From positions 62,001 to 126,000 of the IMG/VR virus record IMGVR_UViG_3300049048_000052: a stretch of 64,000 nt of DNA. One strand, given 5' to 3'. Positions 20,332-62,480 of this stretch are shown piece after piece (the first letter of the stretch is position 1; each line of letters begins with the position of its first letter). The translations under genes were made by a program, and so were the position numbers. The notes under the pieces are model-generated. The model was given only the letters and a program-made list of their open reading frames with translations, was not told the DNA's origin and ran no database searches.

Positions 20332-20421
20332 TGGGATGTAGCTGGTAATTGGTAACCACACAAACTGTTAATTTGTACCCCTAAACATGGGGCCCTGGAG
20401 GTTCGAGTCCTCCCATCCCAG
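20332..20421 (+). tRNA. trnN: tRNA-Asn(GUU) with long variable arm
   Basis: acceptor TGGGATG/CATCCCA, G73, U1:A72; ACAAA-CTGTTAA-TTTGT; variable stem CCCC-TAAACAT-GGGG; T arm GGAGG-TTCGAGT-CCTCC; no CCA. Confidence 0.85.
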
Positions 20422-20456
20422 TTAAATAAATAACAGCAGGTATTTGAGGAGTAAGT

Positions 20457-21146
20457 ATGACCCTAGTTAATTTGCCATGGACAATTGCCGATAATACTGT
20501 CACTCGAATGGGCGGTGATATTGACACCCTCAAGAAGCAAGGAGGAGGTGGGCTCAAAGTAAGAGTATCTCTAAAGCATAAGATCGCAGCTATGTCTGAG
20601 GAACAGCTGACTCAGTACCTTACTGAGTTAGTTGGAGAGAAGAGGGCTAAGCTGGAGTTGTTGGAGCTGGTTGAGGAGTCCCTTAGGAAGTTACGGGTGG
20701 CTAAGAAGATTGAGGAGGTTCAATCTGGACTAATCCACATTCTTGCTAGAAGGGATGAGGCCGAGGCCCTCTACGTTAGATCTAAGTGGAGTATGGAACA
20801 ACTTCAGGGCTACCATCTACAGAGCCCTGAAGATGCCGCTCAGATGTTGAGGACCATATGTCTGCTGAACAGGGACAAGTCATCTGTAGTACCTGAGAAT
20901 GAGAATACTGTAGAGGCCTATGTTTGTACTACAGAGCTTGAGGAGGAACGGAGATGCATGGAAGAATGCCTCCGAGCGTTCAATAAGGCTGAAGAGTTAC
21001 TCACTGAGTATGTGACTAAGGTCTTCATTAGTCTGAATCTAGAGGACTTAATCATAAGTCGTTTTGGTCTGGATAGTTATGTTGTCAAGACTGGTGAGAC
21101 TACAGCGCCAGCAATCCCTAACGGGGGAGAAAGTAAGGAGACCTAA
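20457..21146 (+). CDS. hypothetical coiled-coil protein
   Basis: ORF track; GAGGAG RBS. Confidence 0.7.
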   Translation: MTLVNLPWTIADNTVTRMGGDIDTLKKQGGGGLKVRVSLKHKIAAMSEEQLTQYLTELVGEKRAKLELLELVEESLRKLRVAKKIEEVQSGLIHILARRDEAEALYVRSKWSMEQLQGYHLQSPEDAAQMLRTICLLNRDKSSVVPENENTVEAYVCTTELEEERRCMEECLRAFNKAEELLTEYVTKVFISLNLEDLIISRFGLDSYVVKTGETTAPAIPNGGESKET

Positions 21147-21181
21147 ATCTCTAAGCAAGAGGATACGTTCACGTCAGTTAA

Positions 21182-21514
21182 TTGATTGGAGAACATATGG
21201 AACCACAACAATTGTTTGAGGCTATTAAGCCTTTGGTTGAGTCTGGTATCACAAGGATGGAGATCGAGGTTAAGGAAGTGAACCATGGAACCCTGAAAGG
21301 GGTTATCTGTGTTGTCACCCAGAGCGCCCCGGATCGCCCTGTCAACATCATCGATGTCTTTCAACCAGACGGTAAGCCTGTGGCTCACTATGAGCTAGAG
21401 GTGATGCCAATGCAATCACCCCAACAACCGATGGACCAACAACCTGAACAAGAGCAGATGGATCCGCAGCAACAGAACTCCCAGACGGTCAGACCTGTTC
21501 TGACTCCTAGGTAG
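21182..21514 (+). CDS. hypothetical protein with Gln/Pro-rich tail
   Basis: ORF track; likely start MEPQQ after GGAG. Confidence 0.65.
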   Translation: MIGEHMEPQQLFEAIKPLVESGITRMEIEVKEVNHGTLKGVICVVTQSAPDRPVNIIDVFQPDGKPVAHYELEVMPMQSPQQPMDQQPEQEQMDPQQQNSQTVRPVLTPR

Positions 21515-21589
21515 TCCGTTTGATAGGGGTAGGTCAGCACTTATCCCTATCAGTGTTAATGTCAGGTTACAATTACCATAAGGATAACT

Positions 21590-21796
21590 ATGGGATTATT
21601 TGATAGTTTGTGGGAGGCTCTAGCCCCTAAGAGTAAGGAACCTACTCAGGAGCAGCGCCAAGCTATGCAGGATTATGCTGACTTTGCTGGGGTAGATAAC
21701 TTCAGTCAAGTATTTGGCAAGCGAGAGGGACAACCCTATGGAGGGGAGTTACCCTCGCAAGAGGAGATCGATAGGGCTAAGAACAAACGGCCCTAG
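21590..21796 (+). CDS. hypothetical protein
   Basis: ORF track; AAGGA RBS. Confidence 0.6.
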   Translation: MGLFDSLWEALAPKSKEPTQEQRQAMQDYADFAGVDNFSQVFGKREGQPYGGELPSQEEIDRAKNKRP

Positions 21797-21840
21797 TTTA
21801 TTGGGGTGAGTGACTACCCACCCCAATAAACAAATATTGA

Positions 21841-22893
21841 TTGTCTTACCTAAGTGTAAAGACAGTGCGTAAATTAGCAAGTATACAGAAGATTGTAAGT
21901 GTAGAAGCCATTGAGGGTAAAGATAGAATAGTACAGTGTGGGGTCCTTGGCTGGTCAATGGTTACTCAGAAGTCTAATAACTTCCAAGTGGGTGACTACT
22001 GTGTGTTCTTTGAGATAGATAGTATATTACCTGAGGCAGAGTGGTCAGCCTTCTTAGAAGGTAAGACTAGGATCAGGACTAGGAAGTTTGGTGGTGTATT
22101 AGCACAAGGTCTCATGTTACCCATCGATGCTATACCTGAGGTAGAGTCACATCTACGTCAAGTGGATGGGGATATCGAAGGTCTAGATCTAACAGAGCTA
22201 TTAGGTGTAATACAATGGGAGCCTCCTGTTGATGCTAATACTGGTGAGAGTAGAGGTAACTTCCCTACCCATATCATTAGTAAGACCGATGAGATCAGGA
22301 TACAGAGTTGTCCTAAGGTCTTAGAGGAATTGAAGGGACTACCTTGGTATGCTGCCCTTAAGATGGATGGCTCCAGTGCTACCTACTTCTGGGATGATGC
22401 CCCGCCTAAGATGGATATGTCCCCAGGCTTTGTCAGTTGCTCACGTAATATGAGAAAGAGTGAGGACTCTCATTTCCATCAGGTTGCGCTGAGGTATGGA
22501 CTAGATGAGATATTGAAGACCAATGATTACCTAGTATTCCAGGGTGAGGTAGTAGGTCCAGGTATTCAAGCTAATAGGTTAGGACTTAAAGAGTTAGACC
22601 TATTCATATTTAACGTATATGACAGAAGGGAGAAGAGATACTTAACCCTATCTGAGGCTCTGCAAGTATGTAAGTTTGGTAAGCTCAAGCATGTACCCAT
22701 TATCGATCAAGGGGAGTCCTTTGATCTAACTCAGGAGGCATTAGTCCAAATGAGTATAGGTGAATATGAGGGCACTAAGAATCCTAGAGAGGGTATCGTA
22801 GTGCGCCCTCAGACTCCCGTCTATAGTAATGTATTGAGGGACAGACTGTCCTTCAAAGTAGTTAATCCTAATTATCTGTTGAAGTATGAATAG
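21841..22893 (+). CDS. ATP-dependent RNA ligase (Rnl2/DRB0094-like) with N-terminal OB-like domain
   Basis: motif I KMDGSS, FQGEVVGPGIQ, motif IV EGIVVR, motif V FKVVNPNYLLK; start probably GTG at ~21866. Confidence 0.9.
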   Translation: MSYLSVKTVRKLASIQKIVSVEAIEGKDRIVQCGVLGWSMVTQKSNNFQVGDYCVFFEIDSILPEAEWSAFLEGKTRIRTRKFGGVLAQGLMLPIDAIPEVESHLRQVDGDIEGLDLTELLGVIQWEPPVDANTGESRGNFPTHIISKTDEIRIQSCPKVLEELKGLPWYAALKMDGSSATYFWDDAPPKMDMSPGFVSCSRNMRKSEDSHFHQVALRYGLDEILKTNDYLVFQGEVVGPGIQANRLGLKELDLFIFNVYDRREKRYLTLSEALQVCKFGKLKHVPIIDQGESFDLTQEALVQMSIGEYEGTKNPREGIVVRPQTPVYSNVLRDRLSFKVVNPNYLLKYE

Positions 22894-23119: not shown

Positions 23120-23132
23120 ATAGTTAGATAAG

Positions 23133-23154
23133 AAGGGTCCATTAATGGACCCTT
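23133..23154. terminator. GGGTCC/GGACCC hairpin
   Basis: AAGGGTCC-ATTAAT-GGACCCTT. Confidence 0.6.
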
Positions 23155-23168
23155 AGTTCCCTTTATAG

Positions 23169-24032
23169 GTGGTACTAATGCAATTAATACTGGAGGATCT
23201 CGTCTTTGATGAGGGTAAAAGGGTAACTAGATTAGCCTCTATTGCTAAAAGTTTAGGGCATGAGGCTAAGATAATACATGCACTAAGAGAGTTACCTAGT
23301 GTGGACTTCAAGAGTCCTGCTATATTCTATGGCTCTATTAATGGGGCCCGTAGGATAACTAAGCCTAAGTTCTGGGGCAAGAGTGATGACATAGTTATGC
23401 CTGGGATAATTGGTGAGTGGAATAACTTTAGGTGTACCACTTACTATAATCATCTGGGTCCATATTTACTAAACAGAACCTATGTGATGGCGCCATTAAG
23501 AGAAATCTTTAGGATGGCCTCACTATATAGTGTGATGTTCCATAGCATAGGTGAGAGCTATAGTGACGATGGTCTATTCATAAGACCTGATGATCCCTAT
23601 AAAAGCTTCACTGGTCAACTGGTAGGTGTAAAGGAACCCTTAGATAGGTTCATGAGAGCTAACTGTCTATTCATAGATGAGCCTGATAAGATGGCCGTGG
23701 CCTCAGGTATGAAAAGGATATCTGCAGAGTACCGGCTATTCATTAAGGACTCAGAGATAATCACAGGCTGTCAGTATAGTAGAGAGGGTGACTCTCATTA
23801 TGTCGATGCATTACCCGAATGCCTACTTCTATATGTCCGTCTAGTATTAGACAGTACTAGTTGGAGACCTGCCCGTTTATGGGTTATGGATATAGGGGTG
23901 TATGATGGTCGTTATAGTGTTCTAGAGATAGGCCTAGCTAATTGCTGTGACCTATATGTTTGTAATGAGGAACTTTTTGTAAGAGCATTATTAGAGGTTG
24001 CACTAGATGACTGGAACGATTCTCAAAGCTAG
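23169..24032 (+). CDS. ATP-grasp domain protein (DUF4343/R2K-like)
   Basis: LFIRPDDPYKSFTG, EYRLFI..IITGCQY, VMDIG..VLEIG. Confidence 0.75.
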   Translation: MVLMQLILEDLVFDEGKRVTRLASIAKSLGHEAKIIHALRELPSVDFKSPAIFYGSINGARRITKPKFWGKSDDIVMPGIIGEWNNFRCTTYYNHLGPYLLNRTYVMAPLREIFRMASLYSVMFHSIGESYSDDGLFIRPDDPYKSFTGQLVGVKEPLDRFMRANCLFIDEPDKMAVASGMKRISAEYRLFIKDSEIITGCQYSREGDSHYVDALPECLLLYVRLVLDSTSWRPARLWVMDIGVYDGRYSVLEIGLANCCDLYVCNEELFVRALLEVALDDWNDSQS

Positions 24033-26102: not shown

Positions 26103-26789
26103 ATGATGTATATTCCAAGTGATGGAATGTTTGGGGACATACTAACATTAATGGACCTGTCAAAGAAGGATCCTAGTAAGGTTATGCCTCTGTTTAAGGT
26201 ACCGGGGAGTAGACCCTTGGAGACCTTTACTTTAGAGGGTGTTATCTATAGCACACTACGTGAGATAGCAGCCTATACTGGATTCTCCGAATCTACTATA
26301 TCAGGTAGAAGGAGCGATGAAGAGTTCAGATATAGAAAGATATTTGGGGAGAATCATAAGAACAAATCTGTCTCTCCTGAGCTAATGAGGGCAGGTGGTA
26401 TGTCTGAGGATCGTATACCCAAAATGTCTCATCAGGGTATTGCTATAGATGAGATAGTCTGGGCTCTTATGTGTATCAACAGAGTAAACCTAATGGATGG
26501 TAGAGGCAGTGTTGCTATTACCCCCGTAGCTATTGAGATACTTGATAAGTTAGAGGTAATTAAGCCTGCCATAGCTAGTCCTGCCTCTATATTAAATAGT
26601 GTAATGAGTAGGAAGGGTAAATTTGTAGAGGCACAAGGTATAAAGATATACTCTGATTGTCTTAGGGAAGCAGCCAGGTTAGGAATAACTACTGATGCTC
26701 TGAACGCAGATGATGCTCCTATAGAGTTCACTGGTACTATGATTGCCCCCATGAAGACTATTCTGGAGCTATTATCCCAATGCTATTAG
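26103..26789 (+). CDS. putative DNA-binding protein
   Basis: HTH-like TLREIAAYTGFSESTIS; TATATAAG immediately upstream. Confidence 0.5.
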   Translation: MMYIPSDGMFGDILTLMDLSKKDPSKVMPLFKVPGSRPLETFTLEGVIYSTLREIAAYTGFSESTISGRRSDEEFRYRKIFGENHKNKSVSPELMRAGGMSEDRIPKMSHQGIAIDEIVWALMCINRVNLMDGRGSVAITPVAIEILDKLEVIKPAIASPASILNSVMSRKGKFVEAQGIKIYSDCLREAARLGITTDALNADDAPIEFTGTMIAPMKTILELLSQCY

Positions 26790-27217
26790 AAACTATTAAG
26801 TCTGACCTAAATGAGTCTAGGAGATCAGGGGACTCTGCTAAGCGAGATATCCTAACTGTATTACTATCCCAAGTCGAGGCCAGGATTAAAGATACAGGTC
26901 AAGAAGTAGTCGATGCCGATGTTATTAACCTAGTTAAGAAATGTATCAAGGAGAGAGAGGAGCTAGCTGGTGCATATGTAACAGCAGGTAGACCCACACT
27001 CAATATTGATACAGAGATATCTATACTTAAGGCATATATCCCTCAGCAAATAAGCCGAGAGGATTTAAAGACCATCATAACTACTGTTAAAGAAGTAAGT
27101 GCTAATGCAGATGGCCCCAAGTTAAAGGGTGTGGTCATGAAGTATCTGAAGCAGAACTATGATGGCACCTATGATCCAAGTATGGCATCTTCTATTATTG
27201 ATGAAATAAATAAATAA
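26780..27217 (+). CDS. yqeY: GatB/YqeY domain protein
   Basis: LLETIKSDLNESRR..E..ILKAYIPQQIS..MGVVM pattern. Confidence 0.85.
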   Translation: MLLETIKSDLNESRRSGDSAKRDILTVLLSQVEARIKDTGQEVVDADVINLVKKCIKEREELAGAYVTAGRPTLNIDTEISILKAYIPQQISREDLKTIITTVKEVSANADGPKLKGVVMKYLKQNYDGTYDPSMASSIIDEINK

Positions 27218-29096: not shown

Positions 29097-29942
29097 ATGA
29101 CGGCCTGGTGTAAGACGGATAAGGGCATTACTGCTTCCTATAGAGGCAAGATATATAACATATTAAGTACTAATCCTAAATATGGTGAGATCATTGAGCT
29201 CATTAAGGCTAAGGAATGGGAGAGTGCTATTGAGTTACTTGATGTAGCTCAGACAATCGAAAAGAAATCTGATGGTGCCTTTAGTGTTAGGGATGGTCTA
29301 GTGTATGTTAAGGGTGAGGATCGTCCTCTACCCGAGGTGTTATCTAAGAGAGTCCTAGACTTCTATGAGGAGGGCCTAGATTATGCACCGTTACTTAAGT
29401 TCTGGGGCCATGTTAAGTTGAACCCCAGTAACCGGGCAGTGGATAGATTATATGAATGTCTAGAACATAATCATCATCCTATTACTGAGGACGGCAACTT
29501 CCTTGCATATAAGAAGGTAAGGCAGAGTCCTGATGGTAACCTATATGATATTTATACCTATAGGAATGATAAGGGGACCTTCCTTAATAATGTAGGTCTT
29601 ACTGTAACTATACAAAGGAATCTAGTTGATGAGAATATCGACCAAACATGCTCTTATGGGTTGCATGTGGCTTCTTATGATTATGCTGCTAGAGTTTATG
29701 GTTCTGATAGCGATGTGCTCCTAGAGGTCGAGGTTAATCCTAAGGACGTAGTTGCTATTCCTCGTGACTATAATAACCAAAAGATGAGAGTCTGTGCCTA
29801 TAAGGTATTAGCTATCAGTGCTGGTTATGAGAGGACTGAGGCATACGTTGGGTATGATCAGTACGAGGATGAGGACGAAGAGGAAGCCTATTGGGATGAC
29901 CATTACAGCTATCTCTATGGGGACTATGATGAAGAATACTAA
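29097..29942 (+). CDS. rIIB: rIIB-like lysis-inhibition protein
   Basis: NPS.RAV..LY..L...PIT.DG.FLAYKKV; CS.GLHV; V.VNP.DVVAIP.DYN..K.RVC. Confidence 0.85.
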   Translation: MTAWCKTDKGITASYRGKIYNILSTNPKYGEIIELIKAKEWESAIELLDVAQTIEKKSDGAFSVRDGLVYVKGEDRPLPEVLSKRVLDFYEEGLDYAPLLKFWGHVKLNPSNRAVDRLYECLEHNHHPITEDGNFLAYKKVRQSPDGNLYDIYTYRNDKGTFLNNVGLTVTIQRNLVDENIDQTCSYGLHVASYDYAARVYGSDSDVLLEVEVNPKDVVAIPRDYNNQKMRVCAYKVLAISAGYERTEAYVGYDQYEDEDEEEAYWDDHYSYLYGDYDEEY

Positions 29943-30513
29943 GATAATTGGTATAGATATTGATGGAACTGTAGCCGATACGGGAGAGTGGTTTGCAAAG
30001 GCTCTCTCCAGGGCTACAGGTAAACAGTTGGGTTACTTGGATATCAGTGGTCATGGTTGGGTAGAGGAGGGTATATGCACTCCTCTCCAGTGTGAGGCAG
30101 TACTAAGAGAGTACTGGGATACTGGGTATATGGAAGTGGAACCTATGGAGGGAGCACGTAGGAAGATAAGAGGTCTATTGTTTAGTAGTGCGGCCCCCTG
30201 GGAGATCATATTTGTTACCGCTAGACCTATAGATATGCATGATAAAACGGAGGAGTGGCTGTGTAAACATGACTTCTATTATGATAGGTTGATCTGCACG
30301 GGCTCCCATAATAAGCATGAGCTACCCATAGACTTCTCCCTATTCATTGAGGATAGATATGAGACAGCCCTAGCATTTGCTGAGAAGGGTGTCCCATGTC
30401 TCCTCATTGATAACCCTTGGAACGCAGGTAAACCTGAGCATGACCTAATACATAGGTGTTATGGGGGTTGGGAAGAGGTTGGTGCCTATATTAGCGAAGG
30501 TGTGTATGTCTAA
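29929..30513 (+). CDS. HAD-family 5'(3')-deoxyribonucleotidase
   Basis: IGIDIDGTVAD, FVTARP, FIED, PWN. Confidence 0.85.
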   Translation: MKNTKIIGIDIDGTVADTGEWFAKALSRATGKQLGYLDISGHGWVEEGICTPLQCEAVLREYWDTGYMEVEPMEGARRKIRGLLFSSAAPWEIIFVTARPIDMHDKTEEWLCKHDFYYDRLICTGSHNKHELPIDFSLFIEDRYETALAFAEKGVPCLLIDNPWNAGKPEHDLIHRCYGGWEEVGAYISEGVYV

Positions 30514-30838
30514 AGAGTTCTTCATAACTGATGCACAGGAAGCTAAGCTTAACAAATGGTTAACCCAGGTTAAGAAGGAAGTCTGTGAGGAACAGATGGC
30601 CTTCTATCGTGATGCCATCATTAATCGTAGGGATGATGATATCTTACCTATTGAGTGGTATCAAACTAAACTTAGCTTCATAGAATCCTGTTACAGAGAA
30701 GACAAGTATTATCCTTATGAGGGGGCCTCTGGTGGAGGTCTAAGCTATACATTTGTGCCTACTGGTCTTGGTATGGCTGTCAGCTGTAATTACTTCGGAC
30801 GTGAGATAGACCTTACTGACCTCAATAGTTGGGGATAA
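30506..30838 (+). CDS. hypothetical protein (paralog of 31395..31754)
   Basis: QEAKLNKWL...SYTFVPTGLG...EIDL. Confidence 0.65.
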   Translation: MSKEFFITDAQEAKLNKWLTQVKKEVCEEQMAFYRDAIINRRDDDILPIEWYQTKLSFIESCYREDKYYPYEGASGGGLSYTFVPTGLGMAVSCNYFGREIDLTDLNSWG

Positions 30839-30840
30839 TT

Positions 30841-31392
30841 ATGCTCAAAGTAATTAGTCTGATGGGAGCCCCTGGCACAGGTAAGAGTACCTTAGCCCAT
30901 GGGCTCTTTTATTTGATTAGATCTCAGTTCCCCTATATTAAAACAGAGTTCGTCTCTGAATTTGCTAAAGACATGGTATGGAGAGGGGAACCCTTCCTTA
31001 GTCAAGGCTACATTACAAGTAACCAGTTCTACAGGATGAGGATTCTGCAGGGTAAGGTTGACCTAGTAGTAAGTGATAGTTGCCTTCTCAATGGTTTGTT
31101 ATACAAAGGAACCTGGGACAATAACTATATAGAAGATTTAATATTGGGTCTCCATAGTCACTTTGATAACTATGTAATACATACAGGCCCTCCTCCTAAA
31201 GAGTATGAATCCTCAGGTAGGATTCAGGAATATGAGGAGAGTATGGAGATACATAGGAATGGTATAGAAGAACTAAGACCTATGTCATCAAAGATGAAGA
31301 CGATACTACCTCATTTCCAGTCAGCTGAGTCTGTACTTGCTAGTGTTATTGATAATGGGTTTCTAGATAAGTTATTAGGTAAGACAAGTTAG
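30841..31392 (+). CDS. NadR/AAA_28-like P-loop kinase
   Basis: Walker A GAPGTGKST; EFAKD.VW; VVSDS. Confidence 0.8.
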   Translation: MLKVISLMGAPGTGKSTLAHGLFYLIRSQFPYIKTEFVSEFAKDMVWRGEPFLSQGYITSNQFYRMRILQGKVDLVVSDSCLLNGLLYKGTWDNNYIEDLILGLHSHFDNYVIHTGPPPKEYESSGRIQEYEESMEIHRNGIEELRPMSSKMKTILPHFQSAESVLASVIDNGFLDKLLGKTS

Positions 31393-33552: not shown

Positions 33553-34299
33553 ATGAATAAGCCACTATGGTTACACGCTCTCATAGCCCAGATAACTGAT
33601 ACTAAGAAGAGAGCGGAGGGCATCAAGAAGTCCGTATATCAGAAGTTACAGAAGGCTACTCTCTTCGTAGCTACACTAAAGGAGTACACCCCATTAGTAG
33701 AGGGAGGTATACAGTACACATCTGAGGGTACATCAATCGTACCTGAATCAGTACCTCTACTATTGGATGAGTTCAATGAGGCTGTCTCCAAACTATTAAA
33801 TGAGATGGCTACCCAGGATTGGGGCAATACAAAGGCTAAGGCCGATGTTATTATTGATGATATAGTTATTGTTAAGGATGCACCTGTAACATTCCTAATG
33901 GCGTTACAGAGTCAGCTAATTGATTATAGAACTTTGTTTGATCATGTACCCACTCTAAGTCCCGTGGACAAGTGGGAATATAATGCAGGTCAAATGGTAT
34001 GGAGCACACCAGCTACCATTACTAATAAGGAACAAGTAATTAAGGAGTGGGTACCTATCTTCCAACCTACAGAGCACCACCCAGGTGAGGCCAAGGAAGT
34101 ATCTAGGACAAAGCTAGAGGGTACATGGGAGAGCCGTAAGTTTAGTACTGCACTACTCCCTTCCCACAGGAAAGAATTGCTACAGAGGGTTGATAGACTA
34201 ATTGAGGCGGTAAAGGTGGCACGTGAGGAGGCCAACCGTATTCAAGTAGAACCCAAGGATGTAGCTACAAGTATCATTGGGTACCTAATGGGTGCCTGA
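33553..34299 (+). CDS. conserved uncharacterised coiled-coil protein (DUF7873-like by recall), cognate of the downstream tRNA-mimic RNA
   Basis: ATQDWGNTKAKADV..D...APVTFLMALQSQL.D...P...W; F.PTEHHP; G.W....FS.AL....ELL.RV..L.EAVK.AREEAN. Confidence 0.7.
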   Translation: MNKPLWLHALIAQITDTKKRAEGIKKSVYQKLQKATLFVATLKEYTPLVEGGIQYTSEGTSIVPESVPLLLDEFNEAVSKLLNEMATQDWGNTKAKADVIIDDIVIVKDAPVTFLMALQSQLIDYRTLFDHVPTLSPVDKWEYNAGQMVWSTPATITNKEQVIKEWVPIFQPTEHHPGEAKEVSRTKLEGTWESRKFSTALLPSHRKELLQRVDRLIEAVKVAREEANRIQVEPKDVATSIIGYLMGA

Positions 34300-34712
34300 T
34301 GGTAAACGGCGTAGGCTAAGGTTAAAGGTGTATAGGTAATAGTGTAGGTTCGAATCCTGCCCTTCCCATATATGGGAAGGTAGTCCAACTGGTAGAGACT
34401 GTCCAATACACTATATAAGACTGAGCATTAAGTTCAGATTATCGCCCTAGACTAAGTCTAAGGACAACAGCTCAGGTCGACTGTCTAGGACAACATTGAC
34501 CCACGTTGGTTCGAATCCAACCCAGGCCGCTTGGGGGCGACCCTATATGGGTAGGTAGCTGTCACACTTCTACCCCTTTCTTGGCCTGGTAGACTAGAGG
34601 TTAGTCAGGTCTTTATTAGATTGATCCTAGACAACTGGAAATGAGAATACTGAGATCACTGTTGATGGGGGATTACTAATGCAAGGCATACTGCATGGTA
34701 ATCCCCTTCCTA
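34300..34712 (+). ncRNA. tandem circularly permuted tRNA-mimic RNA (two YrlA-like modules)
   Basis: module 1: T arm 34344-60, closed acceptor CCTTCCCA-TATA-TGGGAAGG, D arm 34383-99; module 2: T arm 34505-21, CCAGGCC/GGCCTGG, D arm GACT-AGAGGTT-AGTC, closing TGTCTAGGA/TCCTAGACA; 3' hairpin GGGGATTAC/GTAATCCCC. Confidence 0.8.
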
Positions 34713-34734
34713 TTATTAATAAAGGAGAAAGAAG

Positions 34735-39264: not shown

Positions 39265-39337
39265 AGGTAGCTGGTCCAATATAGGAACGGGCTGTCTCGA
39301 TAAGAGGCTATGCTAGGTTCGAATCCTAGGCTGCCTA
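39265..39337 (+). tRNA. degenerate tRNA-like gene (Ile GAU-like)
   Basis: AGGTAGC/GCTGCCT plus A; T arm CTAGG-TTCGAAT-CCTAG; bulged anticodon stem, C at position 33, aberrant D loop. Confidence 0.45.
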
Positions 39338-39926: not shown

Positions 39927-39986
39927 GCCGCTGGATATGGTCAGGGACCTGATCACCCCTTGAGGTTCGATTCCTCACAGTTGGCT
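39927..39986 (+). ncRNA. minimal tRNA-like RNA (acceptor, one hairpin, T arm)
   Basis: GCCGCTG/CAGTTGGC; TGAGG-TTCGATT-CCTCA; single GGTCAG/CTGATC hairpin. Confidence 0.45.
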
Positions 39987-40026
39987 TCAGGAGATAATAT
40001 ATATCTCCTATCTAAAGGGTATTAAT

Positions 40027-40140
40027 GAGGGGGCCACCCGACCCTAGGTTCGAATCCTAGTTACGCCATCCGGCTGCGTAATGGCTGAGTGGCTAAAAGC
40101 AGGTAGTAGGAAAATCCTACTCATCGTCGGGAGCCTCCTC
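40027..40140 (+). ncRNA. YrlA-like circularly permuted tRNA mimic
   Basis: GAGGGGGC..CCCGAC/GTCGGG..GCCTCCTC closing stem; T arm CTAGG-TTCGAAT-CCTAG; closed acceptor TTACGC-N9-GCGTAA; D arm TG-GCT-GAGTGGCTAAA-AGC. Confidence 0.75.
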
Positions 40141-40161
40141 TTCAATACCCTTTCTTATTGA

Positions 40162-41981: not shown

Positions 41982-42146
41982 GCCTGGTATGCACTAAGGT
42001 AGTGCGATTAGACCACATATGTTTGGGCTCATAGTTCAATGGATAGAATGATTCCCTCCTAAGGATTAGATCTAGGTTCGATTCCTAGTGGGCCTGCTTT
42101 TTATATGGTGGTTTAGTTATAGTGGGTTCGATTCCCACACCAGGCG
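41982..42146 (+). ncRNA. outer tRNA shell enclosing tRNA-Arg(CCU)
   Basis: acceptor GCCTGGT/ACCAGGC plus G; D arm GCAC-TAAGGTA-GTGC; extended stem ATTAGACCAC-ATAT/ATAT-G-GTGGTTTAGT; T arm GTGGG-TTCGATT-CCCAC. Confidence 0.8.
42025..42096 (+). tRNA. trnR: tRNA-Arg(CCU)
   Basis: GGGCTCA/TGGGCCT plus G; D loop AATGGATA (A20); loop CT-CCT-AA; T arm CTAGG-TTCGATT-CCTAG. Confidence 0.88.
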
Positions 42147-46605: not shown

Positions 46606-46644
46606 AGTAAATTGGAGAGGGTCCTTAATGGACCCTCTAATAAT

Positions 46645-47385
46645 ATGAAGATATTAATAGTAAGTGATATACACTTTGAACGACATGACTACCCTAAGAC
46701 CTTCATAGATAGATTACCTGAGGCTGATGTACTTATAGTAGCTGGGGATATGATTCCCTTTACTGATTATAATTATCGGAACGTAGTGTACAGCCTATCC
46801 AACAAGTATGATGACTTCATACATATAGCAGGTAATCATGAGTTCTATGGTAATGGGATAAAAGAGGGCACCCTTATAGCTAGAGAGGAAGAACATAAAC
46901 AATATAGCTATGTTTACCTAGATAACCAGGTAACTACTGTAGGTGATACAGACCTTATAAGTATTGCTGGCTCTACCACCTGGTTCCCTTGGGTACCTGA
47001 GGTAGATACAGAACGCATATACCTTAATGACTACAACTATATAAAAGAGTTCAAGAAGGACCCTAAGGTGCCCCATGAGTTAAATCAGAAGGCCATAGAG
47101 TTCTGGTGTAACGTAAATGCTGACATATGGGTGATGCACCATTTACCCAGTAAGCAATCAGTACACCCTAAGTATGAGGGTGATGCCTTCAACTGCTTCT
47201 TCCTATCTGATATGGAGGAAGTAATAAGAGAGAGGCAACCTAAGCTAGTTATACATGGGCATACACATGATAGCTTTGATTACCATATAGGTGAGACAAG
47301 GGTTATCTGTAATCCCTATGGTTATGACACATGGAACCATAAGCAATTAAATAAGAACTTTAAACATTTAATCGTGGAGATATAA
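46645..47385 (+). CDS. calcineurin-like metallophosphoesterase
   Basis: SDIH, AGD, GNHE, MHH, HGHTH. Confidence 0.9.
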   Translation: MKILIVSDIHFERHDYPKTFIDRLPEADVLIVAGDMIPFTDYNYRNVVYSLSNKYDDFIHIAGNHEFYGNGIKEGTLIAREEEHKQYSYVYLDNQVTTVGDTDLISIAGSTTWFPWVPEVDTERIYLNDYNYIKEFKKDPKVPHELNQKAIEFWCNVNADIWVMHHLPSKQSVHPKYEGDAFNCFFLSDMEEVIRERQPKLVIHGHTHDSFDYHIGETRVICNPYGYDTWNHKQLNKNFKHLIVEI

Positions 47386-50117: not shown

Positions 50118-50396
50118 ATGAAACCAGGACCTAAGAAGGGTAGTAGTCAGAGTAAATCCCATGTTGCCAAGAGGGCCAAGGCTGTAAAAGGTAAGGCCAA
50201 TGGTATGTTTAAGGATGGAAGACGTTCCTATCGTTCCATAGCGGGAGCTAGGAATAGCGATGGAAAAGTTGTGCATCACAAGGACGGTGATAGGACCAAT
50301 AATTCAAGATCTAATCTAAAGGTCCTGAATGATGGTCCTAGTAGGCCAGGTAGGAAGACAACTAGTAAGCATGAAAGACTTACTAGACGTAAGTAG
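50118..50396 (+). CDS. small HNH endonuclease-like protein
   Basis: VVHHKDGDRTNNSRSNLKVL. Confidence 0.75.
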   Translation: MKPGPKKGSSQSKSHVAKRAKAVKGKANGMFKDGRRSYRSIAGARNSDGKVVHHKDGDRTNNSRSNLKVLNDGPSRPGRKTTSKHERLTRRK

Positions 50397-50567
50397 CCAG
50401 TGTAGCTTAAAAGGTAAAGCGTACCCCTCTCAGGGTATACCGAAAGGGTCCATAGGTAATAGGTGTAGTTGCAAGATTCTGTGAGAGTTATAAACTCCGT
50501 ATTCGGCAGAGTCCCAGACTGCACAACTATACCTATGGATATGAGGGTTCGATCCCCTTCACTGGCG
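50396..50567 (+). ncRNA. 172-nt tRNA-like RNA with a giant variable-region domain
   Basis: GCCAGTG/CACTGGC plus G; D arm GCTT-AAAAGGTA-AAGC; TACCC-CTCTCA-GGGTA; inserted helices TCCATAGGTA/TACCTATGGA, GTGTAGT/ACTGCAC, GATTCTG/CAGAGTC; T arm GAGGG-TTCGATC-CCCTT. Confidence 0.78.
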
Positions 50568-55793: not shown

Positions 55794-56198
55794 ATGGTTA
55801 AACCACGACGACGTAGAAGGTCTGCTGGCTTTAAGCTGTTGAGGCAATGGGCCTTTGTTACAATTGGTTTGATCGTAGTATCAATGGTACTTACCTCAAT
55901 CAACCCAATGCTACTGAACTCTAACCTCGCGCTGTTAGGCTTCTTGGTATGGGCAATATTAGCTATAGGTACTATAGGTTTTGCTGCCTATAGTCTGGAT
56001 GTAGCAATCCAGGCCTCAAAGGTAAGGAAGATCTTCGTTGAGAGGTTTCCTACCTACGAGGCCCTGTCCTGGTATGACTTCTTGGGTATATACCCAGAGG
56101 AAGTGCTGGATAACATTGAGCTCCTAGCTCAGATATGTCGAGAGGAGGAAGACCTCCATGTTTCTTTGTTTGAACTATTAAGGAGAGACTTTCGGTGA
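55794..56198 (+). CDS. two-TM membrane protein
   Basis: basic N-terminus plus two TM segments; coupled to the SPFH gene. Confidence 0.6.
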   Translation: MVKPRRRRRSAGFKLLRQWAFVTIGLIVVSMVLTSINPMLLNSNLALLGFLVWAILAIGTIGFAAYSLDVAIQASKVRKIFVERFPTYEALSWYDFLGIYPEEVLDNIELLAQICREEEDLHVSLFELLRRDFR

Positions 56199-58429: not shown

Positions 58430-58489
58430 ATCTTAGGGCGTAAGCCCTTATTCATTCCTCAGTGGCGCAGTGGATAGCGCACCCGCCTT

Positions 58490-59179
58490 TAGGATAGGAG
58501 CACTTCTAGGGGAAACCCTTAAAGTGAATGTGGTTAAATTCAGGGAAGACTAAGTAGATTATGATCAAACTCCCAATGACAGTTAGGACATAGAGGTACT
58601 AAGTTGTCTACAGAGTTAATGTCGTTAACTAAGGTTTCATGTGGAAAACTAGAGATGGCCTTTCTATGGGCTATTTCAACATGTTTGTTATACCCACAGT
58701 TAATACAACAAGACCAGTCGAGTTTTGCTGCTACAGCTCTAGCCCTTGCTCTAACTAAAGCATAGGCTGAGGACCTGTGATGTTTATTGTACATGGCTTC
58801 TTCTAAAGTGACATTTAGATTTAGTCCCTTACGATGAGATCCAAAGCAGGATTTACAGTAGGTTCTGGAGTTACTTATAGGAGTGGTGCATACCAAGCAT
58901 TTATTCTCGGGTTTCCTCTTGGGGAAATTACGATTATTATGTGTAGCAGCACAACTCTTACTACAGAACTTAGGGTTAGTTGTTTCCTTATTACAGTTGA
59001 GACAATTCATAGTTTATATGTTAATCCTGAGCCAAGCTATTCGAAAGCCCTATTATATCATGGGTTCGAATAGAAGGTGCAGAGACTTAACAGCCACCAC
59101 CTAAGGTCATAAGACTATGGTGAAGATAAAGTCCAGACTACAAACACTCTTGAGTGGCAGCTAAAGCTGTAGTAGGAGG
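58490..59179 (+). mobile_element. group I intron (tRNA-Leu(UAA)-intron-like) inserted after U34
   Basis: P AAATTCAGGGAA 58536, Q AATCCTGAGC 59023, R GTGCAGAGACT 59077, S AAGATAAAGTCC 59123; P1 CTT/GAG, P10 TAG/CTA; terminal G59179. Confidence 0.88.
58540..59010 (-). CDS. intron-encoded HNH homing endonuclease (antisense)
   Basis: Cys-rich Zn fingers; CINCG..VEIAH..N...NLVPLCPNCH.EFD. Confidence 0.85.
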   Translation of the reverse strand: MNCLNCNKETTNPKFCSKSCAATHNNRNFPKRKPENKCLVCTTPISNSRTYCKSCFGSHRKGLNLNVTLEEAMYNKHHRSSAYALVRARARAVAAKLDWSCCINCGYNKHVEIAHRKAISSFPHETLVNDINSVDNLVPLCPNCHWEFDHNLLSLP

Positions 59180-59237
59180 CTAAGCGGTCGGTCGCAGGTT
59201 CGAATCCTGCCTGGGGAGTTTTAGTTAGGAGAAGATC

Positions 59238-60178: not shown

Positions 60179-60200
60179 GTAGTTATTAGGAGTATAGAGA

Positions 60201-60464: not shown

Positions 60465-60505
60465 TTTGACTAACATGGGTATATAGAAGTATACTCATGT
60501 AACAT

Positions 60506-60586
60506 GGGTGGATGACCGAGAGGCCGATGGTGCCTGACTGTAAATCAGGTCGTAACAGCGCGCTGGTTCGAATCCAGCTCCACCCA
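60506..60586 (+). tRNA. trnY: tRNA-Tyr(GUA)
   Basis: GGGTGGA/TCCACCC plus A; CCTGA-CTGTAAA-TCAGG; T arm GCTGG-TTCGAAT-CCAGC. Confidence 0.92.
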
Positions 60587-60595
60587 TTTCAATAA

Positions 60596-60678
60596 CGGCA
60601 GGCTAGGCGAGTTGGTGATCGCTGGGGAGTGTACAACCCTACCTTATAGGAACGTTGGTTCGAATCCAACCCTGCTGA
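60596..60678 (+). tRNA. degenerate class II tRNA-like gene (anticodon ambiguous)
   Basis: CGGCAGG/CCTGCTG plus A; GCGA/TCGC D stem; 9-nt loop AGTGTACAA; long variable arm; T arm GTTGG-TTCGAAT-CCAAC. Confidence 0.5.
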
Positions 60679-61429
60679 TTCTACATAGTAAACAGGGGAA
60701 TGTTATGGTGAGTCGTAGTGTCTACAGACTTACATATAGGTGTAAATGTAAGCACTGTAATAGACCATCGGAATATAAAAGCCATATGATTAGATCTGGC
60801 AATAAGAGATGCAGGGCCCTCAATAAGAAGGCCCTTAATAATATTAATATTGATGATGATACATATGATCCTATATTCGTTGATATAGGTTACACCGATT
60901 AAGGAGAAACAATATGCCACCAGAAGAGGAAGTTAATGATGAGGAAGTCACCAATCCAATCGAGGATGAAGTGGAGAGACAGAAGGCCATCTTTGGCTAT
61001 GCTGATATCGATGAGAAAGCAGAGGAACTTAAAGTCCTCTTTGGCACTGACAGAGACTCTGCCTAGTATCGCGGTAATCATACTGGCCCTGTTTGCTATA
61101 GCGGCTAGTGCGGTGTATGGGATACCAGTATGACTAAATGCGAGGCGTGTAATGATAGTAAATGGTTGTACAGGAGTGTAAGGAATGAGCAAGGTAATAT
61201 CATCTGGGAACCAACAGAGTGCTTCTGCGTCCAAGAGGAAGCAACGGGGAGCCAACCTACTGGTGACGACGATCAGACACAACACCCGTTGTAATTGCGG
61301 CAGAGTTGTTAATGTAAGTAGGGAGGTGCTTAACTATAAGTGCCTTACTTGTTATATAGGTAATTGATTATTAGGACTCAGTAGGTAACCGCTTACTGAG
61401 TCTATTAACTTATTAGGAAGATACTTATT

Positions 61430-61774
61430 ATGTTGGTTAAGATTAATGGGGAAGACCATATTATTGGATTCCACTATGTGAGATGCCCCCTTGGTGAGGC
61501 CCCTAAGAATAAACGGGAGGCTGATGTAGAACGGTCATATATTATACAGAAGTTCTTTGAAGGTAAACTGCCTCCTTATAATAAGGATATGCACCCCTTC
61601 GCATCCATTTGTTATATTAAAAAGCAGGCCACTGGTGAAATGCTAGCTGCCGCAGTATCCATATGTATTGAAGAGGATAACTTCAGTAGGAAAGTTGGTA
61701 GAACTAAGTCTTATAACTCTCTATTAAAGATATTGAATATAGATGCTGATAAGCTGGAGATTATTAATAAGTGA
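61430..61774 (+). CDS. hypothetical protein
   Basis: A.SIC.EEDNFSRKVGR motif. Confidence 0.65.
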   Translation: MLVKINGEDHIIGFHYVRCPLGEAPKNKREADVERSYIIQKFFEGKLPPYNKDMHPFASICYIKKQATGEMLAAAVSICIEEDNFSRKVGRTKSYNSLLKILNIDADKLEIINK

Positions 61775-62301
61775 AGGTAGCCATTGGTACTCAAAGTGGT
61801 CCTAAGATAGAGTCTGTACTCAATGGATTTGAAGTACTAGGCCTAATCGCTATAGATATATATCCTAAGAATTGTATAACGGGAATAGTACAGCCCAAGT
61901 CCTTAAGTCAAATGGAGAACTGTGCTATGACAAGAATGGAGCAGTTGCAGGATGAATTTGGGGACTGTATCTATCATGTGGTAGTTGAGAGTGGCCTTAT
62001 TCAAAAGAGGGCACCCATAGGTAATACTGAAACTACGCTTTGTCTCATTAAGCATGTGCCAACAGGTACTCTAGGTTATGGGACTGGGGGTGAATGGAGG
62101 GTACCTGAGTACATTATCGATCAGCTAAATGAATGTGGTGAGATGGGTAAGACTCAGGTTAAGGGTGCTCAACCCTTAGATAAGCTAGCTATTGGTGGTA
62201 GTGTTATTGATGCTATCACAGGTGGGAGATGGAATAGGGTTGACCAAATAGAGGTTGCCACTATACATGCCCTTGCTTATTTGTTACATGAAGTAGAATA
62301 G
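61771..62301 (+). CDS. yjjX: inosine/xanthosine triphosphatase (YjjX/DUF84-like)
   Basis: MKVAIGTQS.PKI.SV; QP.S; VV.ESGL; GG.I..IT.GR..R. Confidence 0.7.
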   Translation: MKVAIGTQSGPKIESVLNGFEVLGLIAIDIYPKNCITGIVQPKSLSQMENCAMTRMEQLQDEFGDCIYHVVVESGLIQKRAPIGNTETTLCLIKHVPTGTLGYGTGGEWRVPEYIIDQLNECGEMGKTQVKGAQPLDKLAIGGSVIDAITGGRWNRVDQIEVATIHALAYLLHEVE

Positions 62302-62328
62302 ATCATAGCCCCTTAAGTGGGGCACCAC

Positions 62329-62402
62329 GTCCCTGTGGTCCAACTGGTAGAGGTAACGGACTTAAAATCCGTGTGTTGTGGGTTCGAATCCCACCAGGGA
62401 CA
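62329..62402 (+). tRNA. trnL: tRNA-Leu(UAA) with short variable loop
   Basis: GTCCCTG/CAGGGAC plus A; ACGGA-CTTAAAA-TCCGT; 5-nt variable loop; T arm GTGGG-TTCGAAT-CCCAC. Confidence 0.85.
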
Positions 62403-62405
62403 TTT

Positions 62406-62480
62406 GCCGCAGTAGCCCAATTGGGTAGAGGCTGTAGGTTGAGGGCTTACATGTTACAGGTTCAAATCCTGTCTGCGGTA
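62406..62480 (+). tRNA. trnL: tRNA-Leu(GAG) with short variable loop
   Basis: GCCGCAG/CTGCGGT plus A; TGTAGG-TTGAGGG-CTTACA; T arm ACAGG-TTCAAAT-CCTGT. Confidence 0.75.

What the first reader, a model, noticed from the sequence alone, without database searches (positions are those of the whole stretch)
20332..62480. Genome-wide tRNA mimicry and repair toolkit
Seen in one window: at least six anticodon-less or uncharged-looking tRNA folds, six plausibly functional tRNAs with odd architectures, plus an RNA ligase, Thg1 (3'-5' polymerase / 5' end repair), YqeY, a metallophosphoesterase, a HAD phosphatase and a P-loop kinase. Established: phages counter anticodon nucleases with replacement tRNAs and end-healing/sealing enzymes (T4 Pnk/Rnl1 against PrrC). 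Inference: this phage adds a decoy layer that presents tRNA elbows without cleavable anticodons.
Basis: inference. Interest (0 to 1): 0.7.

Follow-up and report, generated by a model that had tools for sequence, protein, structure and literature searches.

The report
Phage tRNA-mimic RNAs with partner protein
This soil jumbo phage really does carry anticodon-less tRNA look-alikes, and two of them belong to a widespread, so far unannotated phage cassette: a protein of unknown function (DUF7873) followed by two rearranged tRNA-shaped RNAs.

Summary
The window is bases 62001-126000 of a 252-kb soil jumbo phage. It has 6 ARAGORN tRNAs, one more tRNA split by a group I intron, and 7 extra tRNA-like folds without a normal anticodon loop. 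All six named enzymes are present.

The decoy-plus-repair reading is only partly supported. Three mimics (34332-34405, 34493-34614, 40032-40106) are circularly permuted tRNA-like modules, in the order T-arm, closed acceptor stem, D-arm. That is the architecture of bacterial YrlA Y RNAs.

The first two lie directly downstream of DUF7873 (33553-34299). This arrangement recurs in about 78 of 80 IMG/VR loci and in isolated Gordonia, Klebsiella, Ralstonia, Rhizobium, Vibrio and Pseudanabaena phages. None of it is annotated there.

- The stems covary.
- U8 and A14 are invariant.
- The 15:48 Levitt pair covaries perfectly.
- Discriminator plus CCA follows the acceptor 3' strand in 44% of modules.
- Module A copies tRNA-Leu.
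- None of six complete genomes checked encodes Ro60.

Best reading: a Ro60-independent, Y-RNA-like ribonucleoprotein. Its function is inferred, not shown. The Thg1-like gene shows no conserved linkage to the cassette. The other four mimics have no relatives to compare with. I rate it a new variant of a known kind.

The parts
20332..20421 (+). tRNA-Asn(GTT), 90 nt, with an unusual long variable arm
   Evidence: ARAGORN; Rfam tRNA 43.7 bits; fold
21841..22893 (+). RNA ligase of Rnl5 / Naegleria NgrRnl type: N-terminal OB domain plus nucleotidyltransferase domain, KxDG motif present
   Evidence: PF21189 and PF09414; phrog_968; PDB 5COT E 7e-43
26780..27217 (+). YqeY (GatB/YqeY-type) protein
   Evidence: PF09424 E 2e-23; phrog_1460
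29818..30513 (+). HAD-superfamily phosphatase, NT5C-like. It may work in nucleotide metabolism rather than RNA end healing.
   Evidence: PF06941 E 5e-9; phrog_420 and phrog_415; no PDB relative by sequence
30829..31392 (+). P-loop protein of AAA_28 type, substrate unknown
   Evidence: PF13521 E 6e-7; phrog_2107, annotated 'thymidylate kinase'
33553..34299 (+). DUF7873 protein (248 aa), the conserved partner of the two permuted tRNA-like RNAs
   Evidence: PF25283 E 1e-59; 2693 cluster representatives; AF2 model pLDDT 95.6 with no known fold; single copy in the genome
34327..34413 (+). Module A, core 34332-34405. A permuted tRNA-like RNA with T-arm at 34344-34360, closed 7-bp acceptor stem, discriminator A, then U8 and a D-arm almost identical to the phage's tRNA-Leu(TAA), all enclosed by a closing stem. 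tRNA-Leu mimic.
   Evidence: Rfam YrlA weak hit 34312-34432; fold; model R1 62.2 bits; family-wide covariation; tRNA-Leu likeness
34471..34645 (+). Module B, core 34493-34614. Second permuted tRNA-like RNA with T-arm at 34505-34521 and a 7-bp acceptor stem closed by a 54-nt branched insert, followed by a D-arm, all inside a long closing stem.
   Evidence: Folds; parse; R1 35.4 bits
36684..37472 (+). Thg1-like protein of bacterial TLP type: a 3'-5' polymerase that repairs tRNA 5' ends
   Evidence: PF04446; phrog_4717 E 2e-85; PDB 4KGK E 3e-63
39265..39337 (+). T3: a 73-nt cloverleaf-like RNA with normal acceptor and T arms, but a 5-bp/5-nt-loop hairpin where the anticodon arm should be
   Evidence: Sequence; fold; not called by ARAGORN or Rfam
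39927..39986 (+). T4: mini tRNA-like RNA with acceptor stem (one bulge), one 7-bp hairpin and a T-arm; no D-arm or anticodon arm
   Evidence: Sequence; fold
40014..40153 (+). T5, core 40032-40106: third permuted tRNA-like module (T-arm, 6-bp closed acceptor, U8, A14, G15:C48, D-arm, extra hairpin) inside a long closing stem. It is not next to a DUF7873 gene.
   Evidence: Fold; R1 36.7 bits, E 7e-11
42025..42097 (+). tRNA-Arg(CCT), ordinary
42092..42146 (+). T6: acceptor/T-arm minihelix whose 5' strand overlaps the 3' end of tRNA-Arg (6 of 7 pairs). Possibly a degenerate tRNA remnant.
   Evidence: Sequence; fold; my own reading of the pairing
46612..47385 (+). Calcineurin-type metallophosphoesterase
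   Evidence: PF00149 E 8e-16; phrog_1649; no PDB relative by sequence
50396..50567 (+). T7: tRNA-like RNA with canonical acceptor, D and T arms, a 6-nt 'anticodon' loop and a ~100-nt hairpin in the variable region
   Evidence: Rfam tRNA 38.7 bits; fold; the ARAGORN intron model is unconvincing
58455..59219 (+). tRNA split in its anticodon loop by a 690-nt group I intron (58489-59178). Reads as Ser-GCT by ARAGORN, or Arg-UCU if the junction is 1 nt further on.
   Evidence: Rfam RF00028 54 bits; ARAGORN -i
58540..59010 (-). HNH endonuclease ORF inside the group I intron, on the opposite strand
   Evidence: PF13391 E 1e-6
60505..60678 (+). Two tandem tRNA-Tyr(GTA) genes; the second is below the Rfam threshold
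62329..62481 (+). tRNA-Leu(TAA) and tRNA-Leu(GAG), 74 and 77 nt, both without the long variable arm
   Evidence: Short tRNA-Leu genes are common in DUF7873-carrying phages.

Best explanation
The window is a tRNA-rich early/auxiliary region of a 252-kb soil jumbo phage.

**Core.** A conserved three-part cassette: the DUF7873 protein gene, followed on the same strand by two small RNAs, A and B.
- Each RNA is a circularly permuted tRNA. A variable-loop base (48) and T-arm come first. Then the 3' acceptor strand, discriminator (often CCA) and a closing loop. Then the 5' acceptor strand, U8 and the D-arm.
- The anticodon arm is replaced by a long closing helix.
- These RNAs fold into the tRNA L-shape. 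Module A copies tRNA-Leu: its D-arm, A15:U48 and A73.

**Inferred mechanism.**
- The RNAs are co-transcribed with DUF7873.
- They are recognised by tRNA-maturing enzymes: RNase P at the 5' acceptor strand, 3' trimming or CCA addition at the discriminator, and TruB/Dus-type modification.
- This yields closed or two-piece tRNA mimics.
- The mimics work together with DUF7873 as a Y-RNA-like ribonucleoprotein, analogous to Ro60 with YrlA/YrlB. It would interact with tRNA-binding host or phage factors during infection.

**Rest of the window.**
- A third permuted module (T5) and four non-permuted anticodon-less tRNA-like folds are lineage-specific additions of unknown standing.
- The Thg1-like protein, Rnl5-type ligase and phosphoesterases are an ordinary jumbo-phage tRNA-repair set. 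They sit nearby but are not evolutionarily tied to the cassette.
For: **Shown**
- Architecture of the three modules.
- DUF7873 is followed by one or two such modules in the window, in L001, L002 and L004 and in nearly all of 80 IMG/VR loci. A strict pattern finds them on the coding strand; the only reverse-strand hit is an inverted cassette.
- Model R1 finds paired hits in 36 loci not used, or only partly used, to build it.
- The cassette is present in isolated phages of Gordonia, Klebsiella, Ralstonia, Rhizobium, Vibrio and Pseudanabaena.
- Negative control: 638 kb around phage Thg1 genes gives one hit.
- Covariation: 11 of 12 stem pairs change on both sides, covariation score 0.90 against 0.19 in shuffles. 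RNAalifold independently recovers the T, acceptor and D stems.
- Tertiary features not used for selection: U8 92/92, A14 91/92. The 15:48 pair is A:U or G:C in 91 of 92 modules. In module B it is 25 A:U, 21 G:C and 0 others, Fisher p 1.4e-13.
- N-CCA directly after the 3' acceptor strand in 57 of 131 modules, against 1.6% by chance. This holds even where neighbouring tRNA genes lack CCA.
- Module A's D-arm is closest to tRNA-Leu in 43 of 46 cases. The discriminator is A in 35 of 46.
- No TROVE/Ro60 in this genome or in 5 other complete DUF7873 phage genomes.

**Known precedent**
- YrlA tRNA mimics are modified by tRNA enzymes. In M. smegmatis they are cut by RNase P and receive CCA (PMC4201824).
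Against: - No expression data: only one soil DNA run holds the region.
- Binding of DUF7873 to the RNAs is inferred from synteny alone.
- The family has a near-neutral pI (median 6.4) and no recognisable RNA-binding or catalytic fold.
- The window's own modules lack encoded CCA.
- The window's module B lacks the UUAAACG motif seen after B in most relatives.
- The Rfam YrlA score is far below threshold: 26.8 against 69 bits.
- T3, T4, T6 and T7 could not be compared with any relative, because no close relative of this phage was found.
Confidence: 0.55

Rival explanations
1. Decoy layer. The anticodon-less tRNA mimics soak up host tRNA-targeting defence nucleases, or their sensors, that recognise the tRNA elbow or acceptor. 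Real tRNAs are spared, and the ligase, Thg1-like protein and phosphoesterases repair what is cut.
For: - The mimics keep the tRNA L-shape determinants and often a CCA end.
- They sit in tRNA arrays of many phages.
- Repair enzymes are encoded in the same window.
- Phage tRNAs and repair enzymes as counter-defence are established (PMC7824862).
Against: - A passive decoy does not explain strict linkage to one protein, two distinct conserved module types, or mimicry of tRNA-Leu in particular.
- To my knowledge (not checked here), most known defence tRNases cut the anticodon loop, which these RNAs lack.
- No conserved linkage to Thg1-like genes.
- No expression or protection data.
Confidence: 0.2
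2. Chargeable two-piece tRNA mimics. After RNase P and 3'-end processing the modules expose a CCA end, and module A is leucylated by LeuRS. The aminoacyl-RNAs then serve as substrates for DUF7873 acting as an aminoacyl-tRNA-dependent enzyme. Alternatively they enter the ribosome, as the tRNA-like domain of tmRNA does.
For: - Encoded discriminator plus CCA in 44% of modules, more often than in neighbouring tRNA genes.
- Module A carries A73, A15:U48 and a tRNA-Leu D-arm.
- From memory, not checked here: E. coli LeuRS does not need the anticodon.
- The gene order equals that of permuted two-piece tmRNA genes, and this phage also encodes a permuted tmRNA-like RNA.
Against: - Module B has no clear identity.
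- DUF7873 has no GNAT, Fem, cyclodipeptide-synthase or SmpB-like fold.
- No tag reading frame follows the modules.
- The window's copies lack CCA.
Confidence: 0.12
3. Cis-acting processing or stability signals. The tRNA-like folds only recruit RNase P / RNase Z to cut the DUF7873 transcript out of a tRNA-array precursor, or protect its 3' end. They have no function in trans.
For: - The modules are always downstream and on the same strand.
- The cassette is often embedded in tRNA arrays, which are processed by the same enzymes.
Against: - One minihelix would be enough for that job.
- Instead there are two different module types with a conserved D-arm, tertiary pairs, closing helices and extra conserved motifs (AUCGCUC after A, UUAAACG after B).
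- In one locus the RNAs lie upstream of the gene and in one they are inverted.
Confidence: 0.1
4. Decaying tRNA genes. The non-permuted anticodon-less folds (T3, T4, T6, T7) are pseudogenes or recombination scars in a fast-evolving tRNA region, with no function of their own.
For: - T6 overlaps the 3' end of tRNA-Arg and pairs only 6 of 7.
- T3 breaks the 15:48 rule (A15 with G48).
- None has a detectable relative.
- HNH/intron activity is present in the region.
Against: - All are on the coding strand with intact 5-bp T-arms and acceptor stems.
- This does not apply to modules A and B, which are conserved across phyla of hosts.
Confidence: 0.35

Closest known systems
YrlA / YrlB Y RNAs with Ro60 (Rsr), Rfam RF02553 (Chen et al. 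2014, PMC4201824)
   Same: - Permuted tRNA-like domain: T-arm, loop-closed acceptor stem, then D-arm.
- The domain is set in a long helix formed by the RNA's ends.
- Levitt-pair covariation.
- Two RNAs in tandem next to one protein gene, on the same strand.
- Occurs in phages.
[quoted passage not shown]
   Different: - No Ro60/TROVE gene in the genome; the partner is DUF7873, with an unrelated fold.
- No GNCGAA motif outside the T-loops in 34280-34760.
- Rfam score 26.8 against a threshold of 69 bits.
- 7-bp acceptor stems with frequent encoded CCA.
- One module mimics tRNA-Leu specifically.
Two-piece (permuted) tmRNA genes of cyanobacteria and alpha-proteobacteria
   Same: - Same gene order: T-arm, 3' acceptor strand with CCA, intervening segment, 5' acceptor strand.
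- The anticodon arm is replaced by a helix.
- A dedicated small partner protein exists (SmpB).
   Different: - No G3:U70.
- No tag reading frame or pseudoknots.
- A full D-arm is kept.
- DUF7873 is not SmpB-like.
- The phage has a separate tmRNA-like gene outside the window.
Phage T4 Pnkp/Rnl1 tRNA healing-and-sealing, and jumbo-phage RNA repair sets (Iyer et al. 2021, PMC7824862)
   Same: RNA ligase, Thg1-like 3'-5' polymerase, phosphoesterases and many tRNAs encoded by one jumbo phage.
   Different: - The ligase is Rnl5/NgrRnl type (nick sealing in duplex RNA), not Rnl1.
- No recognisable Pnkp.
- The genes are scattered over 25 kb rather than forming an operon.
- No conserved linkage to the mimics.
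Phage T4 stable RNAs C and D (species 1 and 2) in the tRNA cluster (from memory, not checked here)
   Same: Small stable RNAs of unknown function, encoded among phage tRNA genes and matured with them.
   Different: No known partner protein and no known permuted tRNA architecture. Not compared by sequence here.

Membership tests
YrlA (Y RNA-like, RF02553) | tRNA-like domain in permuted order (T-arm, closed acceptor-like stem, D-arm) within a helix formed by the 5' and 3' ends | tested here: met
   Folds and parses for 34327-34413, 34471-34645 and 40014-40153
YrlA (Y RNA-like, RF02553) | tRNA tertiary contacts kept, with compensatory 15:48 Levitt pair | tested here: met
   15:48 is A:U or G:C in 91 of 92 modules; module B p 1.4e-13; U8 invariant and A14 in 91 of 92
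YrlA (Y RNA-like, RF02553) | Encoded within about 4 kb of, and on the same strand as, a Ro60/TROVE gene | tested here: not met
   No PF05731 match in this genome or in 5 other complete DUF7873 phage genomes. The control search finds it in Deinococcus and Bacteroides.
YrlA (Y RNA-like, RF02553) | GNCGAAN0-1G motif near the 5' end (proposed Ro60 contact) | tested here: not met
   In 34280-34760 the only CGAA strings are the two T-loops (read by eye)
YrlA (Y RNA-like, RF02553) | Score at or above the Rfam gathering threshold (69 bits) | tested here: not met
   26.8 bits in the window; 37.9 and 25.0 bits in L004 and L001
Canonical elongator tRNA | 5-bp anticodon stem with a 7-nt loop carrying an anticodon; linear order acceptor, D, anticodon, T | tested here: not met
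   Not called by ARAGORN. Loops of 5 or 6 nt, or no anticodon arm at all.
tmRNA (two-piece) | G3:U70 alanine identity pair, tag reading frame, pseudoknots | tested here: not met
   Acceptor 3:70 is G:C in module A. ARAGORN -m calls a tmRNA only at genome 132310-132626. No Rfam tmRNA hit in the window.
DUF7873 (PF25283) | Full-length match above the Pfam gathering score | tested here: met
   202.5 bits against 27, residues 7-246
Thg1-like protein (bacterial TLP) | Thg1 domain, full-length similarity to a solved bacterial TLP | tested here: met
   PF04446 99.7 bits; 4KGK E 3e-63 over residues 6-257. Catalytic residues were not checked individually.
Rnl5 / NgrRnl RNA ligase | N-terminal OB domain plus nucleotidyltransferase domain with the lysine motif KxDG | tested here: met
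   PF21189 and PF09414; aligned to 5COT with K-M-D-G at the motif I position
T4-type Pnkp end-healing enzyme | Fused or paired polynucleotide 5'-kinase and 3'-phosphatase acting on RNA ends | tested here: inconclusive
   Separate NT5C-like HAD and AAA_28 genes 316 bp apart, with an ORF between them. There is a PHROG match to a family named 'polynucleotide kinase', E 2e-12, but no PDB relative. Activity cannot be tested here.

The most novel reading that the evidence does not exclude
DUF7873 and its twin anticodon-less tRNA mimics form a new, Ro60-independent class of phage ribonucleoprotein, found in phages of actinobacteria, cyanobacteria and proteobacteria. One mimic is a tRNA-Leu copy, and both often carry an encoded CCA. 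The RNAs would be matured by the tRNA-processing machinery into two-piece, possibly aminoacylated, tRNA-like molecules. They would act on translation or on tRNA-centred phage-host conflict.
Probability: 0.35. Interest if true: 0.9.

Novelty: new variant of a known kind. Interest (0 to 1): 0.78.

Why it matters
tRNA mimicry by Y-like RNAs has so far been tied to Ro60, because the published survey searched only genomes with a TROVE protein (PMC4201824).

Here the same RNA architecture appears with a different, uncharacterised protein. That family has about 2700 clusters at 50% identity. It occurs in phages of very different hosts, including cultivable model phages, where the RNAs are unannotated or mis-annotated.

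- **Annotation.** This gives a name and a testable partner to a large DUF.
- **Phage tRNA regions.** It reveals a hidden class of non-coding RNA genes there.
- **Experiment.** It offers a tractable system for asking what anticodon-less tRNA mimics do during infection: tRNA quality control, counter-defence, or translation.
- **Caution.** It also shows that the 'repair toolkit plus decoys' picture is not a single evolved unit.

Tried and rejected
**Looking for relatives of the phage**
- Megablast of 6.5 kb against GenBank phages gave no match. A tail-fibre protein search gave only collagen-repeat hits.
- Single-protein locus searches with DUF7873 and with ORF 39357-39776 found no close relative. 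The best Thg1 relatives are 56% identical. So T3-T7 could not be tested for conservation.

**Function of DUF7873**
- PDB profile search gave nothing.
- Foldseek against PDB gave nothing. AFDB clusters gave only uncharacterised proteins.
- VIA-align wide gave only generic helical bundles, Z 8.2 or less.
- The atlas returned only the DUF7873 family itself.
- No PHROG matches and no paper mentions the family.

**Protein-RNA complex prediction**
- The job was not folded and gives no verdict. It is not evidence either way.

**Expression**

**Other searches**
- The promoter/terminator scan found nothing decisive around the cassette.

**Rejected ideas**
- The extra R1 hits at 62366-62438 and 60550-60628 are not mimics. 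They are junctions of tandem tRNAs.
- The Thg1-like gene is not part of the cassette.
- The ARAGORN intron model of T7 as tRNA-Gly has a mismatched stem and an odd intron position.
- The Plastid-ycf2 and mascRNA hits are reverse-strand or low-score echoes of tRNAs.

Full report
**Origin and observation**

The window is bases 62001-126000 of a 251,780-bp IMG/VR virus record with an estimated completeness of 100%. Only one soil-metagenome DNA run holds it. Almost all ORFs lie on the + strand.

ARAGORN finds six tRNAs. Rfam adds a tRNA-like hit at 50396-50567 and a group I intron at 58479-59155.

The T-arm consensus GGTTCRAWTCC occurs 19 times against 1.8 expected. Genome-wide, strict T-arm hairpins number 33 on the + strand and none on the - strand.

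Seven T-arms lie outside called tRNAs and sit in folds without a 7-nt anticodon loop, at 34344, 34505, 39313, 39961, 40044, 42122 and 50543. An eighth, at 59194, is the 3' half of a tRNA split by the intron.

**What the mimics are**

Three of them are circularly permuted: 34332-34405, 34493-34614 and 40032-40106. A T-arm comes first. It is followed by a 7-nt 3' acceptor strand, a discriminator, a closing loop and the complementary 5' acceptor strand. Then come two bases and a D-arm. The whole module is enclosed by a long helix where the anticodon arm would be.

This is the architecture described for bacterial YrlA Y RNAs (PMC4201824). Rfam's YrlA model gives a weak hit at 34312-34432: 26.8 bits, E 0.16, threshold 69.

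**The conserved cassette**

The first two modules lie directly after ORF 33553-34299, a full-length member of Pfam DUF7873. Homologues from a 174-kb metagenomic contig, a 30-kb contig and a Micromonospora contig are each followed by two modules of the same build. Their acceptor sequences are entirely different.

A profile search finds 2693 cluster representatives of the family, and IMG/VR holds at least 127 loci.

- **Pattern search.** A strict pattern requires a 5/5 T stem, a 7/7 acceptor stem and a D stem. In 80 loci it finds one or two modules, about 150 nt apart, just downstream of the gene in about 75 loci. The reverse strand gives a single hit, which is an inverted cassette.
- **Covariance model.** Model R1 was built from 59 modules. 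It finds paired hits in nearly all of 36 loci not used, or only partly used, for the model.
- **Isolated phages.** R1 also finds the modules in Gordonia GodonK, Klebsiella vB_KpM_FBKp24, Ralstonia phiRSL1, Rhizobium RHph_TM30, Vibrio K479 and Pseudanabaena Pam2. The RNAs are unannotated there. In the Klebsiella record one is overlapped by a 'tRNA-Sup-TTA' annotation.
- **Negative control.** 638 kb around phage Thg1-like genes gives one hit and no DUF7873.

**Evidence that the RNAs fold as tRNA**

My alignment was selected for pairing, so the 100% paired cells are by construction. The diversity of pairs is not. Eleven of 12 stem pairs change on both sides, and the covariation score is 0.90 against 0.19 in shuffles and at most 0.19 when partners are slid. 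RNAalifold, with no structure given, recovers the T, acceptor and D stems on a 30-sequence alignment with flanks.

Positions not used in the selection behave as in tRNA:
- U8 is present in 92 of 92 unique modules and A14 in 91 of 92.
- The tertiary 15:48 pair is A:U or G:C in 91 of 92.
- Within module B there are 25 A:U, 21 G:C and no other combination (Fisher p 1.4e-13).

The window's three modules obey the same rule.

**Two module types and the CCA end**

- **Module A.** It has discriminator A in 35 of 46 and A15:U48 in 44 of 46. Its D-arm segment is closest to tRNA-Leu in 43 of 46 cases, out of 282 phage tRNAs from the same loci. In the window its D-arm nearly equals that of the phage's own tRNA-Leu(TAA).
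- **Module B.** It has discriminator U in 31 of 46 and no clear isoacceptor likeness.
- **CCA.** Discriminator-CCA follows the 3' acceptor strand in 57 of 131 modules, against 1.6% expected. This includes 19 of 41 in loci whose neighbouring tRNA genes mostly lack CCA. A mature tRNA-like 3' end, or at least its sequence, therefore seems to matter. The window's copies lack CCA, as do this phage's tRNA genes.
- **Flanking motifs.** Conserved flanking motifs exist. There are hexamer repeats upstream of A and an AUCGCUC-type motif after A that can pair with a GAGCG upstream. UUAAACG follows B in most loci but not in the window.

**The partner protein**

DUF7873 gives a confident AlphaFold model: pLDDT 95.6, long helices plus a beta-sheet with a long hairpin. 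Nothing convincing matches it in PDB, AFDB, the ESM Atlas or PDB sequences.

It is absent from PHROGs v4, from the searched literature and from 14 model cellular genomes. Its pI is near neutral. It occurs once in this genome.

No TROVE/Ro60 gene is present here or in five other complete carrier genomes. The published YrlA survey searched only TROVE-containing genomes, which explains why this set was missed.

**The enzymes**

- The Thg1 homologue is of the bacterial TLP type (4KGK, E 3e-63).
- The ligase is of the Rnl5/NgrRnl type with KxDG (5COT, E 7e-43).
- From published work on those families (recalled, not checked here), both act on duplex, acceptor-stem-like ends.
- The HAD protein is NT5C-like and the P-loop protein is AAA_28-like. 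The metallophosphoesterase has no close solved relative.
- Such sets, including sporadic Thg1, are already described for jumbo phages (PMC7824862).
- The genes are spread over 25 kb, and the Thg1-like gene shows no conserved linkage to the cassette.

**The remaining mimics**

- T3 (39265-39337) is a 73-nt cloverleaf with a 5-nt loop in place of the anticodon loop.
- T4 (39927-39986) lacks the D and anticodon arms.
- T6 (42092-42146) is a minihelix overlapping the end of tRNA-Arg.
- T7 (50396-50567) has a 6-nt loop and a ~100-nt variable-region hairpin.

No relative of this phage close enough to test them was found. They may be functional mimics or decaying tRNA genes.

**Interpretation**

*Shown*
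- A conserved DUF7873 plus twin permuted tRNA-mimic cassette exists.
- It has tRNA-like tertiary architecture and is independent of Ro60.

*Inferred*
- Co-transcription with DUF7873.
- Maturation by tRNA enzymes.
- Action together with DUF7873 as a Y-RNA-like RNP.

*Still open*
- The decoy idea, a chargeable two-piece tRNA mimic, and a purely cis-acting processing role remain possible. Each is ranked under rival explanations with its refuting experiment.

The find fails three of five YrlA membership features: Ro60 linkage, the GNCGAA motif and the Rfam score. I therefore file it as working like a Y RNA tRNA mimic but not as a member of that family. It is a new variant of a known kind.

Noticed in passing
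window 58455-59219 (intron 58489-59178; ORF 58540-59010 on the - strand): A phage tRNA is interrupted in its anticodon loop by a 690-nt group I intron. The intron carries an HNH endonuclease ORF on the opposite strand. tRNA identity depends on the exact junction: Ser-GCT or Arg-UCU.
   Followed up: partly
outside the window: genome 132326-132562 (L091 6326-6562) and genome 130487-130728 (L091 4487-4728): The phage also encodes a permuted, two-piece tmRNA-like gene. RF04321 scores 45 bits against a threshold of 47; cyano_tmRNA gives E 8e-9; ARAGORN calls it tmRNA*. A second group I intron lies nearby.
   Followed up: partly
outside the window: genome 50858-51592: ARAGORN calls a tRNA with a CTA anticodon ('Pyl', amber-reading) and two tRNAs with 2-base 'anticodons'. 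These are further irregular tRNA-like genes upstream of the window.
   Followed up: no
window 62329-62481, and tRNA-Leu genes in L001-L092: Short tRNA-Leu genes without the long variable arm (72-80 nt) make up 26 of the 42 tRNA-Leu genes in DUF7873-carrying phage loci. The window's odd Leu tRNAs therefore belong to a wider phage type.
   Followed up: partly
L089 2682-2761 (Klebsiella phage vB_KpM_FBKp24, MW394391.1): GenBank annotates a 'tRNA-Sup-TTA' that overlaps the upstream part of permuted module B. This is probably a mis-call caused by the permuted tRNA-like fold.
   Followed up: partly
L005-L090, regions flanking the modules; window 34300-34460: Hexamer repeats of the type CUNARN occur upstream of module A. 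A conserved AUCGCUC-type motif follows A, and UUAAACG follows B in most loci. The window's RNA B lacks UUAAACG.
   Followed up: partly
window 23169-24032 and 27400-28185: An R2K-clade ATP-grasp protein lies just after the RNA ligase. A PduO-type cobalamin-adenosyltransferase-like protein lies after YqeY. Their roles are unknown.
   Followed up: no
L001 3004-4173: In one 174-kb metagenomic phage contig an RtcB RNA ligase lies 1.8 kb upstream of the DUF7873 cassette. This recalls the rsr-yrlBA-rtcBA operon of Salmonella.
   Followed up: no
window 34667-34712: A strong hairpin followed by a U-rich stretch lies after RNA B. It may be the terminator of the cassette transcript. The simple scan did not flag it, because its loop is too long.
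   Followed up: partly
window 3597-4328, 46108-46605, 56195-57115, 61771-62301: A NUDIX hydrolase, a DPBB lytic transglycosylase, an SPFH/Band-7 protein and an NTPase_I-T (DUF84) protein are encoded in the same window.
   Followed up: no
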